Assembly: GCF_001194135.2 (NCBI RefSeq)
Contig: NC_068989.1
Coordinates: 7,237,698 to 7,285,784, forward strand
Length of the DNA: 48,087 nt
Origin: Octopus bimaculoides
Taxonomy: Eukaryota
Reading direction: 5' to 3'
Shown here piece by piece: positions 7,722-20,100 of the stretch. The first letter of the stretch is position 1; every line of letters starts with the position of its first letter. The translations under genes were made by a program, and so were the position numbers. The notes below the pieces were generated by a model, which was not told the origin of the DNA, did not search any database, and was given only the letters and a program-made list of their open reading frames with translations.

Positions 7722-10700
7722 CCGTAAATCCTCAAGTATAATCCGCACATTTTTGCCAAAATTTACAGGTCAAAATTTCTCGTGCGTACTATACACGAGG
7801 TTAAAAATGAGAAATATTTTCTAAGCAAAATTTTCTAAGTGATAAATATGTGAAAGACAATTTACTTAGTATTTATTTTTCACTGACGTTATTACTGTTA
7901 TTTCTTGATTGGTATCACTATGCATAGGTGAAATCCTCACGGAGGGCATCCAATCATAGAAACCTTGTTGTGGCGGTTCCTGTCAGACCACACAACGCCA
8001 CAACCCATGCGAGCATGGAGAATGGATGTTAAATGATGAAATATATATATATATATATAATAATATTAGGGACAAAATCCAAAATTACAGGTAAAAACTC
8101 AATTAAAATCAATTTATAAAAAATTAAAATCAAATTGAGCTTTATAGATTATAATATATATAAAAATATATAGTTTTCATCGATGAGTTCTTGAAACTTG
8201 GTTCTTTTCCCTAAAACTATATATATATGGTGTACCTTATTTGTGGAATTCTTTCTGCACCTTGATTTGGTAAAAGATATTTGCCCAAGGTGCCATGCAG
8301 TGGGCCTGAACTTAAGACCAAATGGTTGGGAAGCAAGTTTCTTAACCACACAGCCGACACCATTTATATACTTTATACATGTATTTACACACACGTTTAC
8401 ATGTAAATCAGAGTTATGGAGGTGGGGTCTGTTTCATACAGCAGTAAATGTGAGTTATAATAATAAGAATAATTAAAAATGTTTATGACGTAATGTATGA
8501 GAGAGAGAGATAAGGAGACTGAGATTAAAGAAAAACACAGAAGTACTGTCGGCAATGCAATAATACTCACTGGCCAAAATGAGAGTCACCAGGCAGAGAA
8601 TGAAACAGATGATGTTGAAGATAAACTGAAGGCAGCCGTCTGTACATCGAATCAACAACATTATTATCGGCTGAAAGAGAAAAACAAAGCAAAGCAAGCC
8701 AGGGTTACAACAGATTCTTTCATGGTTTTATCTGCATGACTGGATGAAATGGTCGGTTGTTTGTTTGTTTGTTTTAGTATGGTCCTTTGTTTATTTATTT
8801 ATTTAGCTATTTATTTTCTATGCTTGTTTGTTTATTTTTGTTGTTTTTTTTTTTTATAGAGCTGTGTAAGATAAATACTTGCAAACAAATAGTAATGGCT
8901 GAGATCAGCAATCGCAGAGCAAACGGTGCAGTTTAGATAAATAGCAGCAGAAGAAGAAAAGAAAAGAAGAAAAAAAATCAATGGAGTGTGGTTGTATATA
9001 AACAACTGCAAATAAATAGTGTGGCTTAGATAAACACTTGCAAAATAAACGGTGTTGCTGATGCTGGCTTAGGAGAAACGGTTGCAAATAAAAATGATGT
9101 GGGCTTCAATAAACAATTATAAATGAAAGAAAACACAAGAGAGAAGTGATTAGTGGTTTTGTGTGTTGGTAACTGAAAAATAACTAAATAAGCAGAAGGA
9201 CTGATAATTCCATACGAGAAAGAAGATTGAGGGGTTTGCTTAATGTAAGCTGTACGATGGAAAACTAGCTGAGCCAAGATGATACTAGCTTGTTTATCTA
9301 ACTTGATGGATTATAGGTTCAAATCTTGTCTTTATGTTGTTCTATAATCTTCACTTGGCTGGCATTGGGTGTCAGAAAGATATTTCATGCTTCAAGAGTG
9401 ATTTTAACAAACATGGTTTGTTAAATCACTCCTGCTGTAGCAGAGAGGAAATGAGATGAGAAGTTGAATCTCCAGGAAACTGAGCTTGCGATACGGTTTC
9501 AATTCTCAGTGGGGGAACGTCTTGCATTGCTCAGGAGTGTTGTCACTTCTCTTTCACTTTCCCTATAAACTCAACAAACCAGGGACGTGCCGCCTAGGTG
9601 GACAAGGTAGGCAGTGCCTACCTTGAATAAAATATATCGATAGCAGCATTTTCCTCTCATGGCAAAATATGCACCAAGAGTGGCTGTGTGGTAAGTAGCT
9701 TGCTTACCAACCACATGGTTCTGGGTTCAATCCCACTGCGTGGCATCTTGGGCAAGTGTCTTCTACTATAGCCTCGGGCCGACCAAAGCCTTGTGAGTGG
9801 ATTTGGTAGATGGAAACTGAAAAAAGCCTGTCGTATATATATGTGTGTGTGTGTGTGTGTCTGTGCTTGTCCCCGTCACTTAGCGGTTCGGCAAAAGAGA
9901 CCGATAGAATAAGTACTAGGCTTACAAAGAATAAGTCCCGGGGTCGATTTGCTCGACTAAAGGCGGTGCTCCAGCATGGCCACAGTCAAATGACTGAAAC
10001 GAGTAAAGAGTTACTCTGATTACTCTGCATAANNNNNNNNNNNNNNNNNNNNNNNNNNNNNNNNNNNNNNNNNNNNNNNNNNNNNNNNNNNNNNNNNNNN
10101 NNNNNNNNNNNNNNNNNNNNNNNNNNNNNNNNNNNNNNNNNNNNNNNNNNNNNNNNNNNNNNNNNNNNNNNNNNNNNNNNNNNNNNNNNNNNNNNNNNNN
10201 NNNNNNNNNNNNNNNNNNNNNNNNNNNNNNNNNNNNNNTTTTTTTTTTTTTTTTTTGTGTGTTTTACTACATAAAGAGCACCAACCGCCTACCCTGAGTA
10301 ATTACTGACAGCACATGCCTGCAACAAACAATCACTCACTGATAGATATCACTGACCTCAAAAAAGCCAAGTCATTGGCTCCACTTGACATACTTGTATA
10401 AGTAAATAATTTTCTTTTGTTTTGTTTCTTAAGAAGTGCATTTCATTTCCTTGACTAGAAAAAGATTAACAATTCTAGAAAGATTTGAGCTCACAAATGT
10501 GAAACAGTGAAGTACCAATCGTAAGACCCCCAACATAGCAGTGTATTACTTGTATTAAGCTTATATTTATACCTGTGTTATAATAAAGAAAGCTGTTTAT
10601 TAATTAGTCTAGAGTATATAACTTTTACTAAAAAAAAAGCGATTATTAAAAATCCTGATTTTCATATATTTTTATCAAAATGTGGTTTTCAAATTTCTTT

Positions 10701-11095
10701 TATTATTTGAGATTTCAACTACAGAAAAAGTTTTAATTTACTATGGGAAGGCATTATTTAACACAGTGAGGTACCATTCTGCCATTATCCTTCCTATCTC
10801 TCTTACACTTCATGATACTTCATACAGACATATCAATGAAAACATATTTCCGATAGGTAAGTCCTTCAAGGAAATTATTGTTTGTATGATTATTTTTTTT
10901 ACTAGTTTCAGTCATTTGACTGTGTCCATGCTGGAGCACGACCTTTAGTCGAGCAAATCGACCCCAGGACTTATTCCTTGTAAGCCTAGTACTTATTCTA
11001 TCGGTCTACTTTTGCCAAGCCACTAAATTACGGAGATGTAAACACACCAGCATCGGTTATCAAGCGATGTTGGGGGGACAAACACAGACACACAA

Positions 11096-17100: not shown

Positions 17101-20100
17101 GCCAAAAGTCACCTGACAGTAAATAAAAACCATTTAATTCCAGGATTTATTTATGTTTAACAACTGAATGAATTTAATAATAGCATCTAAATAAGAAACA
17201 TCACGAACATTCTTCAAATTGAAGTCCTTCTTTCTCTTGATTGACACATTTTCCCATTCAAGTTAATACAGAATTACAAAATTCACATCATCAAAATCTC
17301 GAAGCTATGAGATAATACGTGATTAATTCAAAGCAATGTGAATAAATAGGTGTTAGATTTGATGGGGTAGTTTGGATGCTTAAAGGTTAAATGCAAGAGG
17401 GTAAATGCTCTCAGATGCTGCCAAAACTTACATGAAATCTTCCTATCAAAGAGGAGAAATGATCACATGAAAGGCTGTGGAAAGAGAAAAGAGAAACAGA
17501 GAGAAAAAGAAAAGCGAAACAAACTTACCACAAACCAGTATCGTTTTTCAAGGAAGCGACTGTTGGGCCACATTCTCTTGTAGTACATTGACATTAAGCA
17601 GCCAATAGGAGCACACACTATCCAGGCCAATATCATCAGAATTACTGCAAAAAACACAATAATATTGGAAGAATATCTGAGAAAATGTCCGTCTTTTAAA
17701 TGATCATCACAGTCCCATGTCAGTTGATATTCAGATTTACTCCACACCTGGACAGGTGAGACAACCACGTCTCCCTTGTTATTCAGATTTGGTGAAAATG
17801 ATAATTTATATCACTACTTACCATGAGCTTTAGCAATGGGGTATCTTGAAATACCAGAGATATCTTCAGTTTCTGACAGGTCCACTTCTTCCACTGAGAC
17901 AATTGGTACACGACCAATGCCAAGACCGTGTTCTGTCTTCTTACCTGGAATACAAGAATGCAGAGTCAGTTAAAACTATTATTATCAGTATAATCAACAT
18001 ATTCTCCTCTCAGATTCACACACTCATTGCAGCCATCCTTCAGTTTTTCTAAGCTCTGTAAAAGAACTCAGAAGGTTGGGCCTTCAACCAGGCCTTTCAC
18101 AAAACCCTTAAAGCCAGGAACTTTACATCACCCCCTCGTAAGTATATCTGGTCTACCCTTCATACAGCAATAAAAACATGGTAGATACATCCTATTATTA
18201 CTACTGTTGTTGTTGTTGTTGTTGTTGTTTAGTGACAAATCAGCCCTGATCGAGCAAGATGATCTGGCTGTAGCCATACTTGTTGTAATATTCAGATAAA
18301 GTGTATGCAAGACCCTTATCCAATGTGTCCTTTTTTTTTTTTTAAATACAACAGAATGGTGACCCCTTAAACAGTGTGGCATGTTTGGTGGTAAGACTCC
18401 AGTTCAGGAATTTAGAGGAGTATGGAATTACTCTTAGCCACCACAATTCTTAGATTCCCAACAAAGAAAGCTATTACTTCCTTACCATAAAGGAATGTGA
18501 TGATTCTGGTTTCTTACCAAGAAAAGAATGCCTGGTTCCCTTTTAATAAAGGAGATACACCAGATTCCCTAGCTAGAAAATTTTAGAGTTCCTAGTTCTC
18601 TTCCAAGCCAAAAAAAAAGAATCTCCTGGATTGCAACCAAAAAGAGAATCTTGGTTGCCTACCAAGAAGGAGACCCTTATTCCCCACAAAAAAAGGAGTA
18701 CCCAGTAGGAGTACCCTACAAAAGAAATGTACCTAGTACTTTGTTCTAAAAGAGCATGCTCCTGTCTTCATATCAAAAATGTTGTTCCTATCTCCCTATC
18801 AATCTCCATGGTTCCCACCAAAAATGGATCTGCTCCTGGTTGGTAAAGTCTTGGTAGGGCCATCTCACAAGGAGACATTGTACGAGTTTGGGTTCTGTGA
18901 TGGTGTTAAAGAGAGAAATCTGAACTTACCGTCCCATGCTTTACCTCCGCCCAACAACACGTGCCATTTGCCTTCCTTCAACATGTAGTCATGTTTGTTG
19001 CCAGCACTTTTCTGGATATGGAACAAGCATCGTAGACGGTTGTTGTAGTGGGATCCAGTTTCAAAGACAATTCCTTTTTTGGGCTGATGGAGAAGAGAGA
19101 GAGAGAGATTAAAAAAATATGAAAATATGAGACAAAAGGAAGAGAAAAAGAGAGGAAGATAGGACAGAGAAAAAAGAGTTTAAAAAAGCAAGAAAGGAGG
19201 AGAGAGGATGAGTAAGGGACAGAGAGAGAGAGAGAGAGAGAGATAAAGGCATAAGGGAGAAGTGAAAGAAGAAAATAGGAGAGAAGTGAAAAGAAAGAAA
19301 CAGAAAGAGAAACGAGGAGAAAGTGAGGAGAAATAAATTAACAATAGTTGATGATATTAAATATGTTTTATTAAAACAGTTTGATTAATTGATTGAATTT
19401 TAATAATTTCCACGGTCAGCCTGTGATTCAATACAAATGAGACCAGTTCTGACCGTTGTTATGCTCAATATGTGACTAAATATTATGCATCCTGCATACA
19501 TTAGTTGGACTGACATCCTCATCTTGATTGTTGCTTTCACTACATTTCAGCTGTTGTCTGCTTCGGCCTTCTTCAGGTATCTGGAGTTGAATTCGGTTGT
19601 AATTCAACAGAATTTCTACCCCGGGGAAACGTTAGCATGCCAGGCGAAATGCCTGGGGCCACACCAGGTTCCATTGTCTGCTTTGGCTTGGCTTCTATGG
19701 CTGGATGCCCTTCCTAACACCAACCGCTTTATAAAATGCACTGTGTGCTTTTTACGTGGCACCAGCACCAGTGTTATGTCAAAAAAAAAAAAAAATGGAT
19801 CAAAGGTCCTTCTCAAGACAGGCTCATGGAGCTGGCTTCTCAGATTTTGCAGTGTGTGTATTCTCTCCCTGGATGGGATGCCAGTCTCTCACAGGAACAC
19901 TCATTTTCGCCAGCTGAGTGGAGTGGAGCAGCAAGAAATGAAGGGCTTTGCTCAAGAACATAATGCATCACCTGGGTGAGGAATTGAAACCACAATCTTA
20001 CAGTCATGAGTCCAAGACCCTAACCACTATGCCATACACCTCCACAGCAATGTGAAATGAAGTGTTTTGCTTAAGAAAACAATGCATTGCCCAGTCCAGG

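What the first reader, a model, noticed from the sequence alone, without database searches (positions are those of the whole stretch)
8571..17944. FRRS1-like b561 domain has lost both ligands of the cytosolic heme while keeping the outer His pair
Seen: KAH374V..WFVVY415W..RAH451P..FNIIC487F (Tyr codon TAC at 14263-14265; Cys codon TGT at 8605-8607). Spacing H1 to H2 (+41) and H3 to H4 (+36) is ungapped against human FRRS1 (KVHG..WFQVHR..YHPYLG..FNWTHW, from memory). Established: in cytochromes b561, His1/His3 bind the non-cytosolic heme and His2/His4 bind the cytosolic, ascorbate-side heme. The basic residues of that face are also gone (ARFFK to SM394YYK; HR to YW), and glycines near the outer His are now bulky (HG to HV, LG to ML). 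Inference: the ORF is intact over 15 exons, so this looks like a maintained single-heme or pseudo-reductase (receptor, scaffold or sensor, cf. FRRS1L) or a Tyr/Cys-ligated variant rather than a decaying pseudogene. A-to-I recoding cannot restore His (TAC would become Cys; TGT has no A).
Basis: partly seen in the sequence, partly recalled or inferred. Interest (0 to 1): 0.8.

Follow-up and report, generated by a model that had tools for sequence, protein, structure and literature searches.

The report
Octopus FRRS1-like gene missing heme ligands
This octopus gene is annotated as an iron-reducing membrane enzyme, yet it has lost the residues that hold two of its three hemes and has still been kept nearly unchanged by selection across octopuses, so it most likely no longer carries electrons across the membrane and does some other job.

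Summary
It is letter-for-letter the RefSeq protein XP_014774762.1, 'putative ferric-chelate reductase 1' of Octopus bimaculoides. H374 and H451 (outer heme) are kept. The cytosolic-heme ligands are Tyr415 (TAC, 14263-14265) and Cys487 (TGT, 8605-8607).

Real FRRS1 sequences confirm the ungapped +41 and +36 spacings. The N gap (10033-10238) lies inside intron 11 and has no effect on the coding sequence.

New evidence:
- O. sinensis, O. vulgaris and Argonauta have the same Tyr/Cys pair.
- Cuttlefish transcripts have His/Phe, and a bivalve relative (Solemya) is fully canonical, so the loss was stepwise.
- The DOMON-domain heme ligand Met is Glu in all these cephalopods.
- Three family-conserved arginines on the cytosolic face are gone.
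- Two positions beside the outer histidines that are always small in relatives are bulky here.
- dN/dS is 0.11-0.16 overall and 0.04-0.09 in the b561 helices, so this is not a pseudogene.

Best reading: a selectively maintained, redox-disabled ('pseudo-reductase') member of the FRRS1/CYBDOM family. It is a new variant of a known kind and of moderate interest. Heme content and function remain untested.

The parts
5062..30637 (-). Whole gene. It has 15 coding exons and encodes 601 aa: signal peptide, reeler domain, DOMON domain, a b561-type helical bundle and a C-terminal helix. It is identical to O. bimaculoides XP_014774762.1, 'putative ferric-chelate reductase 1'.
   Evidence: Pfam gives Reeler 67.9 bits, DOMON 26.7 bits (below the 32.7 cut-off) and no b561 hit. 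The AlphaFold2 model has mean pLDDT 89.5.
30448..30637 (-). Exon 1: start codon at 30637, signal peptide and the start of the reeler domain. The family-conserved reeler His (position 35) is Ser here (30535-30533).
27855..28000 (-). Exon 2 (reeler domain).
26919..27007 (-). Exon 3 (reeler domain). The family-conserved His at position 117 is Lys here (26995-26993).
26369..26471 (-). Exon 4: end of the reeler domain and the linker.
25300..25512 (-). Exon 5: first part of the DOMON domain. Its last codon, GAG (25302-25300), encodes Glu247, where 98% of relatives have the Met that ligates the DOMON heme.
   Evidence: PMC10691727 for the ligand role.
22519..22623 (-). Exon 6 (DOMON domain).
18930..19083 (-). 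Exon 7 (DOMON domain).
17822..17944 (-). Exon 8: end of the DOMON domain with the retained His339 (17930-17928), and the start of helix 1 with H1 = His374 (CAT, 17825-17823).
17529..17644 (-). Exon 9: helix 1 and the cytosolic loop.
- Val375 sits where relatives always have Gly or Ala.
- Met394 (17588-17586) sits where 93% have Arg.
- K397 is retained.
14182..14268 (-). Exon 10: helix 2. Position H2 is Tyr415 (TAC, 14265-14263), followed by Trp416 where most relatives have Arg.
13199..13267 (-). Exon 11: H3 = His451 (CAT, 13243-13241) and helix 3. Leu455 (13231-13229) sits where 94 of 95 relatives have Gly.
10033..10238 (.). Assembly gap (206 N) inside intron 11. It abuts a copy of an interspersed repeat (9660-10032) and has no effect on the coding sequence.
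8571..8670 (-). Exon 12: the cytosolic turn and helix 4.
- Ile472 sits where 98% of relatives have Arg.
- Gln480 (8628-8626) sits where 98-100% have Arg (position H4-7).
- Position H4 is Cys487 (TGT, 8607-8605).
- Cys491 sits where relatives have Gly or Ala.
7493..7639 (-). Exon 13: helix 5 and the retained His538 (7523-7521) at its cytosolic end.
5753..5823 (-). Exon 14 (cytosolic segment).
5062..5154 (-). Exon 15: the C-terminal helix with His583 (5121-5119), and the stop codon TAA.

Best explanation
This is the coleoid-cephalopod member of a lophotrochozoan FRRS1/CYBDOM subgroup (reeler + DOMON + b561). The canonical electron relay has been dismantled, yet the protein is kept by strong purifying selection.

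In canonical members the route is inferred to be: cytosolic ascorbate, then the cytosolic b-heme (H2/H4), then the outer b-heme (H1/H3), then the DOMON heme (Met/His), then an extracellular acceptor.

In this protein:
- The entry station has neither ligand (Tyr415, Cys487). It also lacks the family-conserved arginines of that face (R394M, R472I, R480Q).
- The exit station has lost its Met ligand (Glu247).
- Only the ligands of the middle station (His374, His451) and the DOMON His339 remain. Even there, two positions that are small in all or nearly all relatives (Gly/Ala 95/95; Gly 94/95) are now Val375 and Leu455.

I therefore commit to this reading: the protein does not move electrons from cytosolic ascorbate across the membrane. 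It acts as a non-catalytic membrane protein (binding, scaffold or receptor role) that uses its extracellular reeler and DOMON domains and a tightly constrained helical bundle. It holds at most one heme, at the outer site.

Shown: the sequence states, their conservation, the stepwise history and the purifying selection.

Inferred: loss of the cytosolic and DOMON hemes, and loss of reductase activity.

Open: whether the outer heme is still bound (my estimate is about 0.4-0.5), and what the present function is.
For: 1. Gene model and codons. The protein is identical to RefSeq XP_014774762.1.
2. Collinear alignment to real FRRS1 from vertebrates and lophotrochozoans places Tyr415 and Cys487 exactly at H2 and H4, without gaps.
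3. Among the 150 closest family representatives of an exhaustive search, H1 is His in 140/140, H2 in 138/142, H3 in 137/137 and H4 in 132/133. Arg at H4-7 is present in 133/133. The four H2 exceptions are mis-spliced models.
4. Family-invariant positions lost in octopods cluster on the cytosolic half of the bundle, plus the DOMON Met.
5. The history is stepwise. Solemya is canonical. Cuttlefish have Glu247, Phe at H4 and no R472, but keep H2 and R480. Octopods add H2 to Tyr, R480 to Gln and R394 to Met.
6. Purifying selection: dN/dS is 0.16, 0.115 and 0.109 for the three octopod pairs, and 0.04-0.09 in the b561 helices. Synonymous differences occur at the Cys487, His374 and His451 codons.
7. 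The 15-exon structure is conserved in O. sinensis and Argonauta.
8. The cuttlefish ortholog is found as transcripts in many runs.
9. The roles of H1-H4, the DOMON Met/His and Arg H4-7 come from PMC10691727.
10. Pfam b561 scores fall along the series: P0172 36.0, Solemya 31.4, cuttlefish 24.0, octopods no hit.
Against: - No biochemical data exist for any member of this clade.
- Loss of ligands does not prove loss of heme. Tyr and Cys can ligate heme in other proteins, and a single His (as in cuttlefish) can hold a five-coordinate heme.
- Two other conserved histidines sit near the cytosolic face (His538, His583).
- The very strong constraint on the helical bundle could mean that a cofactor-dependent function persists.
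- I found no direct transcript evidence for the octopus gene itself. There is only the RefSeq model and the cuttlefish transcripts.
- I identified the Met247 column as the heme-ligand Met because it is the one Met conserved in about 98% of relatives' DOMON domains. I did not align it directly to D. melanogaster CG8399 or to cellobiose dehydrogenase.
Confidence: 0.7

Rival explanations
1. The protein is still a working transmembrane reductase. A cytosolic-side heme is held by non-canonical ligands: Tyr415 and/or Cys487 in octopods, a single His415 in cuttlefish, or His538/His583. The DOMON heme would use His339 with a different sixth ligand.
For: - Tyr415 and Cys487 are invariant in four octopods, and Cys487 shows a synonymous codon difference.
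- The bundle is under very strong constraint, with dN/dS of 0.04-0.09.
- His538 and His583 are conserved in the cephalopods and in Solemya.
- From general knowledge, Tyr (catalase) and Cys (P450) are known heme ligands.
Against: - The pair is not conserved across the clade: Tyr/Cys in octopods, His/Phe in cuttlefish.
- The conserved arginines of that face are lost at the same time. R472 is lost in all these cephalopods; R394 and R480 are lost in octopods. PMC10691727 names Arg H4-7 as the one cytosolic ascorbate-site residue completely conserved in the CG8399 group.
- His538 and His583 are also present in canonical relatives that keep H2/H4, so they are not compensatory novelties.
- Glu is not a known substitute for Met in DOMON cytochromes (general knowledge).
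Confidence: 0.1
2. It is a one-heme, outer-face redox protein. His374/His451 still hold a heme that exchanges electrons only with extracellular partners. The protein would then be a surface cytochrome or redox sensor, without transmembrane transfer.
For: - H1, H3 and the neighbouring family-invariant Met378 and Trp382 are retained in all these cephalopods. The His codons vary synonymously.
- The losses concentrate on the cytosolic half of the bundle.
Against: - Two positions next to H1 and H3 have become bulky in octopods. H1+1 is Gly/Ala in 95/95 relatives and is Val here. H3+4 is Gly in 94/95 and is Leu here. These changes may block the porphyrin.
- The natural extracellular partner, the DOMON heme, has lost its Met ligand.
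- With about 54% identity between octopus and cuttlefish, retention of two particular residues is only weak evidence.
Confidence: 0.17
3. It is an artefact or a dying gene: an assembly or annotation error at the two codons, a missing exon in the N gap, or a recently inactivated pseudogene.
For: - The window has eight N gaps, one of them inside the finding.
- My first database search with a partial query found no ortholog.
Against: - The same codons occur in three other independently assembled octopod genomes.
- The gap is intronic and the orthologous introns are gap-free.
- The 15-exon ORF is intact with canonical splice sites in three species.
- dN/dS is 0.11-0.16.
- The losses predate the split between octopods and cuttlefish.
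Confidence: 0.02

Closest known systems
FRRS1 / SDR2 (vertebrates) and CG8399 (insects): CYBDOM ferric-chelate reductases
   Same: The architecture is the same and the alignment is collinear over the full length: signal peptide, reeler, DOMON, b561-type bundle and C-terminal helix. Identity is about 25% to vertebrates and 28-34% to lophotrochozoan members. H1, H3, the DOMON His, all conserved cysteines and the WF motif before H2 are kept.
   Different: - H2 is Tyr and H4 is Cys.
- Arg H4-7 is Gln.
- R394 and R472 are lost.
- The DOMON Met is Glu.
- Two conserved reeler histidines are lost.
- Pfam b561 gives no hit.
- The branch is long in a distance tree.

PMC10691727 describes the four histidines and the DOMON Met/His as universally conserved in the animal CYBDOMs it examined.
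Solemya velum KAL5016941.1 (P0277), the closest canonical relative found
   Same: It is 41% identical and falls in the same clade in the distance tree. It shares subgroup motifs (ERYWFV, AGGY, LP.KAHP, IPEP.P.GRRFK) and the loss of the two reeler histidines.
   Different: It keeps H1-H4, R472, R480, G455, G491 and the DOMON Met. Pfam b561 scores 31.4 bits.
Cuttlefish ortholog (P0276 cluster, including Acanthosepion pharaonis CAE1280480.1)
   Same: It is 54% identical. It shares Glu at the DOMON Met position, loss of H4, loss of R472, and loss of the small residues at H3+4 and H4+4.
   Different: It is an intermediate state. H2 is still His, R480 is kept, H4 is Phe rather than Cys, and position 394 is Lys. 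Pfam b561 just passes (24.0 vs a cut-off of 23).
FRRS1L (vertebrate DOMON-only relative, a component of AMPA-receptor complexes; from general knowledge)
   Same: It is a precedent that an FRRS1-family protein can serve a non-reductase role at the membrane.
   Different: FRRS1L has lost the whole b561 domain. The octopus protein keeps the complete, highly constrained bundle. No sequence comparison with FRRS1L was made here.
Other b561-annotated proteins without the canonical histidines: Drosophila CG6479 (excluded from analysis in PMC10691727) and Potamilus streckersoni KAK3595291.1 (P0240, H4 = Phe)
   Same: They show that loss of ligand histidines happens elsewhere in the superfamily.
   Different: CG6479 was not compared here. 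P0240 has lost only H4 and keeps Arg H4-7. Neither is known to form a conserved clade with combined loss of H2, H4 and the DOMON Met.

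Membership tests
FRRS1 / CYBDOM (reeler-DOMON-b561) family | Homology and domain order: N-terminal reeler, then DOMON, then a multi-helix b561-type membrane domain. | tested here: met
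   - Collinear full-length alignments.
- Pfam Reeler scores 67.9 bits.
- DOMON scores 26.7 bits, below the 32.7 cut-off, but covers 120 of 124 profile positions.
- The AlphaFold2 model has two beta domains and helices at 369-395, 410-437, 450-474, 478-506, 517-541 and 573-600.
- The reeler fold matches F-spondin 2zot (TM 0.72).
FRRS1 / CYBDOM (reeler-DOMON-b561) family | Four heme-ligating histidines H1-H4 in four consecutive helices. | tested here: not met
   H1 = His374, H2 = Tyr415, H3 = His451, H4 = Cys487. There is no other His in helices 2 or 4. Relatives have His at these positions in 97-100% of cases.
FRRS1 / CYBDOM (reeler-DOMON-b561) family | DOMON heme ligands Met and His. | tested here: not met
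   The Met column (98% Met in 95 relatives) is Glu247. The His column (100%) is His339. The ligand role is taken from PMC10691727. I matched the columns by conservation, not by a direct alignment to CG8399.
FRRS1 / CYBDOM (reeler-DOMON-b561) family | Conserved Arg at H4-7 on the cytosolic face (ascorbate site). | tested here: not met
   It is Gln480 here. Arg is present in 133/133 representatives. PMC10691727 reports this Arg as completely conserved in the CG8399 group.
FRRS1 / CYBDOM (reeler-DOMON-b561) family | Ascorbate-reducible hemes and ferric-chelate reductase activity. | not testable with these tools
   This needs the expressed protein. The name 'putative ferric-chelate reductase 1' in RefSeq rests on similarity only.
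Eukaryotic cytochrome b561 (Pfam PF03188) | A match to the family profile at the curated cut-off of 23 bits. | tested here: not met
   O. bimaculoides and Argonauta give no hit even at E <= 1. Cuttlefish scores 24.0, Solemya 31.4 and P0172 36.0. A mammalian FRRS1 (P0001) also falls short at 20.4 bits, so this test is weak for the whole FRRS1 group.
Eukaryotic cytochrome b561 (Pfam PF03188) | The b561 helical-bundle fold. | tested here: inconclusive
   The model has the expected helices at pLDDT 93-98. However, the full-length Foldseek query returned only reeler and beta-domain matches. A model of the membrane domain alone could not be submitted.
Pseudoenzyme (a catalytically disabled homolog kept by selection) | Homolog of an active enzyme family that lacks residues essential for its chemistry. 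| tested here: met
Pseudoenzyme (a catalytically disabled homolog kept by selection) | Purifying selection and conservation across species. | tested here: met
   dN/dS is 0.11-0.16. Four octopods and the cuttlefish orthologs all have intact ORFs.
Pseudoenzyme (a catalytically disabled homolog kept by selection) | Demonstrated absence of the ancestral activity. | not testable with these tools
   This needs heme quantification and reductase assays.

The most novel reading that the evidence does not exclude
The cytosolic pocket is not empty but repurposed. Octopods (Tyr415/Cys487) and cuttlefish (His415/Phe487) would hold a five-coordinate or thiolate/phenolate-ligated heme, or another cofactor or metal. 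That would turn an electron-relay cytochrome into a ligand- or redox-sensing membrane receptor, a coordination type not described for any b561 protein.
Probability: 0.08. Interest if true: 0.85.

Novelty: new variant of a known kind. Interest (0 to 1): 0.5.

Why it matters
The four histidines of cytochrome b561 are treated as universal. Surveys discard sequences that lack them (PMC10691727).

Here a whole animal clade has kept an FRRS1-type protein for a long time after it lost both ligands of the cytosolic heme and the Met of the DOMON heme. The membrane bundle is the most constrained part of the protein.

If the inference holds, three things follow:
- It is a natural 'one-heme or no-heme' b561 scaffold. 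It could be used to ask what each heme contributes to folding and function.
- It shows that the reeler-DOMON-b561 architecture has a function that does not depend on transmembrane electron transfer. That bears on the still unknown in vivo role of FRRS1/SDR2 and on the precedent of FRRS1L.
- It is a caution for annotation. 'Putative ferric-chelate reductase 1' in the cephalopod RefSeq records predicts an activity the sequence probably cannot support.

Tried and rejected
1. The first word-index search used a 271-aa concatenation of exons and found nothing. This was a false negative. A later search with the full-length protein aligned to P0172 found the O. sinensis, Argonauta, cuttlefish and Solemya proteins. 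Even that search missed P0172 itself, so '4 hits' is a lower bound.

3. I tried to build a hybrid profile from exon translations plus vertebrate FRRS1. MAFFT scattered the short fragments, so this failed. I searched instead with a vertebrate FRRS1 profile. This biases the 150 returned representatives toward canonical members, so degenerate relatives elsewhere may exist unseen.

4. I retrieved real FRRS1 sequences using the human sequence recalled from memory as bait. Only the returned database sequences were used as evidence.

5. A PDB sequence search with the b561 region found nothing, even at E = 10.

6. Foldseek with the full-length model gave no b561 match.

7. The apparent H2 substitutions in P0163, P0151, P0129 and P0162 were rejected as mis-spliced gene models. 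They break exactly at the WFQV|H exon boundary.

8. I looked for a second, His-bearing copy of exon 12 or a tandem paralog in the window and found none.

9. Literature searches found no paper on this gene in cephalopods, on naturally single-heme b561 proteins, or on the SRA runs that carry the cuttlefish transcripts.

10. Rfam found nothing in the window.

11. P0172 comes from an unnamed JGI sample. I could not establish whether cephalopods also keep a canonical FRRS1 paralog.

Full report
**What is there.** I read the cited places directly and rebuilt the gene from splice sites and reading frames. The minus strand carries 15 coding exons between 30637 and 5062. All have AG acceptors preceded by pyrimidine tracts and GT donors (13 of 14 introns begin GTAAG or GTGAG; intron 1 begins GTAAA), and the phases are compatible. 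They give 601 codons plus TAA.
- His374, CAT, 17825-17823
- Met394
- Tyr415, TAC, 14265-14263
- His451, CAT, 13243-13241
- Cys487, TGT, 8607-8605

A cluster look-up later showed that this protein is letter-for-letter XP_014774762.1, 'putative ferric-chelate reductase 1' of Octopus bimaculoides. So the window is O. bimaculoides, and an independent annotation uses the same exons.

**The assembly gap.** The N run at 10033-10238 lies inside intron 11 (13198 to 8671). Exon 11 ends in phase 0 and exon 12 starts in phase 0. I mapped the O. sinensis and Argonauta hians orthologs onto their genomic loci. Both have the same 15 exons, with identical lengths for exons 2-15. Their exon 11 is followed directly by exon 12 across introns of 4555 and 745 nt that contain no N. 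The O. bimaculoides intron aligns collinearly with the O. sinensis intron on both sides of the gap. The O. sinensis stretch that corresponds to the gap is at most 228 nt and has stops in all three frames. The gap abuts a copy of an interspersed repeat that has about 20 copies or fragments in the window, several of them next to other gaps. The gap is therefore irrelevant to the coding sequence. No second H4-type exon or paralogous copy exists in the readable window.

**Are Tyr415 and Cys487 really at the ligand positions?** I retrieved real FRRS1 proteins using the recalled human sequence only as bait. One primate cluster was 100% identical to the bait over 80% of its length. tblastn and MAFFT align the octopus protein collinearly over its whole length to vertebrate FRRS1 at about 25% identity. 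The motif pairs are KVHG / KAHV, WFQVHR / WFVVYW, YHPYLG / AHPIML and FNWTHW / FNIICF.

An exhaustive profile search of 1.84 billion representatives gave 5248 relatives, and I analysed the best 150. In these:
- H1 is His in 140/140
- H2 is His in 138/142
- H3 is His in 137/137
- H4 is His in 132/133
- Arg at H4-7 is present in 133/133

The four H2 exceptions are gene models that break at the exon boundary just before H2. One bivalve paralog (Potamilus, P0240) has Phe at H4. Helices 2 and 4 of the octopus protein contain no other histidine. PMC10691727 states that H1/H3 hold the non-cytoplasmic heme and H2/H4 the cytoplasmic heme. It also states that in the CG8399/SDR2 group these lie in helices 1-4, and that Arg at H4-7 is the one cytosolic ascorbate-site residue completely conserved in that group.

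A search with the full-length protein aligned to its best relative found four proteins:
- O. sinensis, 96% identical, in a cluster that also holds O. vulgaris and O. bimaculoides
- Argonauta hians, 78% identical
- a cluster of cuttlefish proteins, 54% identical, including Acanthosepion pharaonis
- the bivalve Solemya velum, 41% identical

The states at the key positions form a series:
- Solemya is fully canonical: His at H1-H4, Arg472, Arg480, Gly455, Gly491 and the DOMON Met.
- Cuttlefish have Glu in place of the DOMON Met and Phe at H4. They have lost Arg472 and have Cys at 455 and 491, but keep His at H2 and Arg480.
- All four octopods have Glu247, Tyr415, Cys487, Gln480, Met394, Ile472, Val375 and Leu455.

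PMC10691727 reports the DOMON Met and His as the predicted heme ligands, conserved in every animal CYBDOM it examined. The Met column is 98% Met in my 95 non-cephalopod relatives, and the His column is 100% His.

I listed all positions that are at least 85% conserved in relatives. The octopod departures are two reeler histidines (also lost in Solemya), the DOMON Met, and a set on the cytosolic half of the bundle: A393, R394, H415, R472, R480, W485, H487 and G491. On the outer half the main departures are Gly455 and the always-small position after H1. It is too broad for the loop as a whole, which keeps K397, R398, K408 and R409.

**Is it maintained?** Codon alignments give the following dN/dS values (Nei-Gojobori):
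- 0.16 for O. bimaculoides vs O. sinensis (dS 0.13)
- 0.115 for O. bimaculoides vs Argonauta (dS about 1.2)
- 0.109 for O. sinensis vs Argonauta (dS about 1.2)

The b561 helices are among the most constrained parts, at 0.04-0.09. The reeler domain is the least constrained, at 0.2-0.3. Cys487 is TGT in Octopus and TGC in Argonauta. His374 and His451 alternate between CAT and CAC. The cuttlefish protein is encoded on intronless 2.1-3.0 kb contigs from many sequencing runs, so it is transcribed. A distance tree puts cephalopods plus Solemya in one clade, next to P0172, and shows a long cephalopod branch. A decaying pseudogene, an assembly error and a mis-annotation are thus excluded for practical purposes.

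**Structure.** AlphaFold2 on the O. bimaculoides protein, with a 100-sequence alignment, gave mean pLDDT 89.5 and pTM 0.77. The model has two beta-rich extracellular domains and helices at 369-395, 410-437, 450-474, 478-506, 517-541, 543-559 and 573-600, at pLDDT 93-98. Foldseek against the PDB matched the reeler domain of F-spondin (TM 0.72). It also gave a weak match to the heme-binding gamma subunit of ethylbenzene dehydrogenase for the DOMON part. The membrane bundle did not surface from the full-length query. Pfam recognises the b561 domain in P0172 (36.0 bits), Solemya (31.4) and cuttlefish (24.0) but not in octopods.

**How it most likely works.** In the canonical family, electrons are thought to pass from cytosolic ascorbate to the H2/H4 heme, then to the H1/H3 heme, then to the DOMON heme and on to an extracellular acceptor (the 'redox bridge' model discussed in PMC10691727). 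In octopods the first station has lost both ligands and its conserved arginines, and the last station has lost its Met. Only the middle station keeps its ligands, and its pocket has acquired two bulky residues.

I conclude with about 0.7 confidence that the protein no longer transfers electrons across the membrane. It appears to be retained for a role that depends on its extracellular domains and on the precise shape of its helical bundle. It holds at most one heme at the outer site. The stepwise order argues for progressive relaxation of the redox function under continued selection for something else: the DOMON Met, H4 and R472 were lost before the octopod-cuttlefish split, and H2, R480 and R394 later in octopods.

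Rivals:
- A still-active enzyme with unusual ligands (0.1). This is weakened by the non-conserved Tyr/Cys versus His/Phe pairs and by the simultaneous loss of the arginines.
- An outer-face one-heme redox protein (0.17). This overlaps with my reading and is undecided.
- An artefact or pseudogene (0.02).

**Comparison and novelty.** By homology the protein is a member of the FRRS1/CYBDOM family. It fails three of the family's defining functional features: four histidines, DOMON Met/His, and Arg H4-7. The closest analogies are FRRS1L (general knowledge), which dropped the whole b561 domain, and scattered b561-annotated proteins without the histidines, such as Drosophila CG6479, which the cited survey simply excluded. 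I found no paper describing this cephalopod clade or a naturally conserved b561 bundle lacking the cytosolic ligand pair. However, the search covers open-access literature only, and my family sample is biased toward canonical members. I class it as a new variant of a known kind. Interest is moderate (0.5): pseudoenzymes are common, but this one breaks a rule regarded as universal, it is old and strongly constrained, and it offers a natural test bed for the roles of the individual hemes.

Noticed in passing
window 30533-30535 (Ser35) and 26993-26995 (Lys117), reeler domain: Two histidines conserved in 96% and 92% of FRRS1-family reeler domains (the 'P.H' and 'VTH' motifs) are absent in all the cephalopod proteins, and also in the otherwise canonical Solemya relative. 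This subgroup's reeler domain therefore changed before the heme ligands did. The reeler domain is also the least constrained part of the protein (dN/dS 0.2-0.3)..
   Followed up: partly
window 7521-7523 (His538) and 5119-5121 (His583): Two further histidines are conserved in all the cephalopods and Solemya. His538 is at the cytosolic end of helix 5. His583 is about eight residues into the C-terminal helix. Their distance to the former cytosolic heme pocket could not be measured because no model coordinates were available..
   Followed up: partly
window 9660-10032, with about 20 further copies or fragments (e.g. 10898-11293, 21320-21610, 27252-27566, 33722-34084, 35819-36155, 47850-48041): An interspersed repeat of about 350 bp occurs on both strands. 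Copies end at, or close to, five of the eight N gaps (10033, 36215, 42670, 45894 and the far side of 46645). The assembly gaps are therefore probably breaks in repeats. No Rfam family matched..
   Followed up: partly
P0121 (4752 aa; representative returned): This giant protein has 23 tandem DOMON-like repeats with a period of about 200 residues. In all 23 repeats the heme-ligand Met position is Val. The organism was not looked up..
   Followed up: no
P0163, P0151, P0129, P0162: These public gene models of FRRS1 relatives seem to lack H2. In fact they diverge exactly after 'WFQV', at the conserved exon boundary one or two residues before H2. These are mis-splicing artefacts that could be mistaken for ligand loss.
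   Followed up: yes
P0240, Potamilus streckersoni KAK3595291.1: This multi-DOMON bivalve FRRS1 paralog has Phe at H4 (FNWIFW) but keeps H1-H3 and Arg at H4-7. It may be an independent case of loss of one cytosolic ligand.
   Followed up: partly
window 20186-20767 and 34169-34707: These are long low-complexity tracts: trinucleotide-type repeats that read as poly-Thr, poly-Pro or His/Tyr runs, and CA/TG-rich microsatellite. They lie in intron 6 of the gene and upstream of it, and they produce long spurious open reading frames..
   Followed up: no
L001-L004 (cuttlefish transcripts): The database gene call for the cuttlefish ortholog starts at a GTG codon, seven codons upstream of the first ATG. 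The true start is probably Met8, giving 603 aa, which matches the 603-aa members of the cluster..
   Followed up: partly
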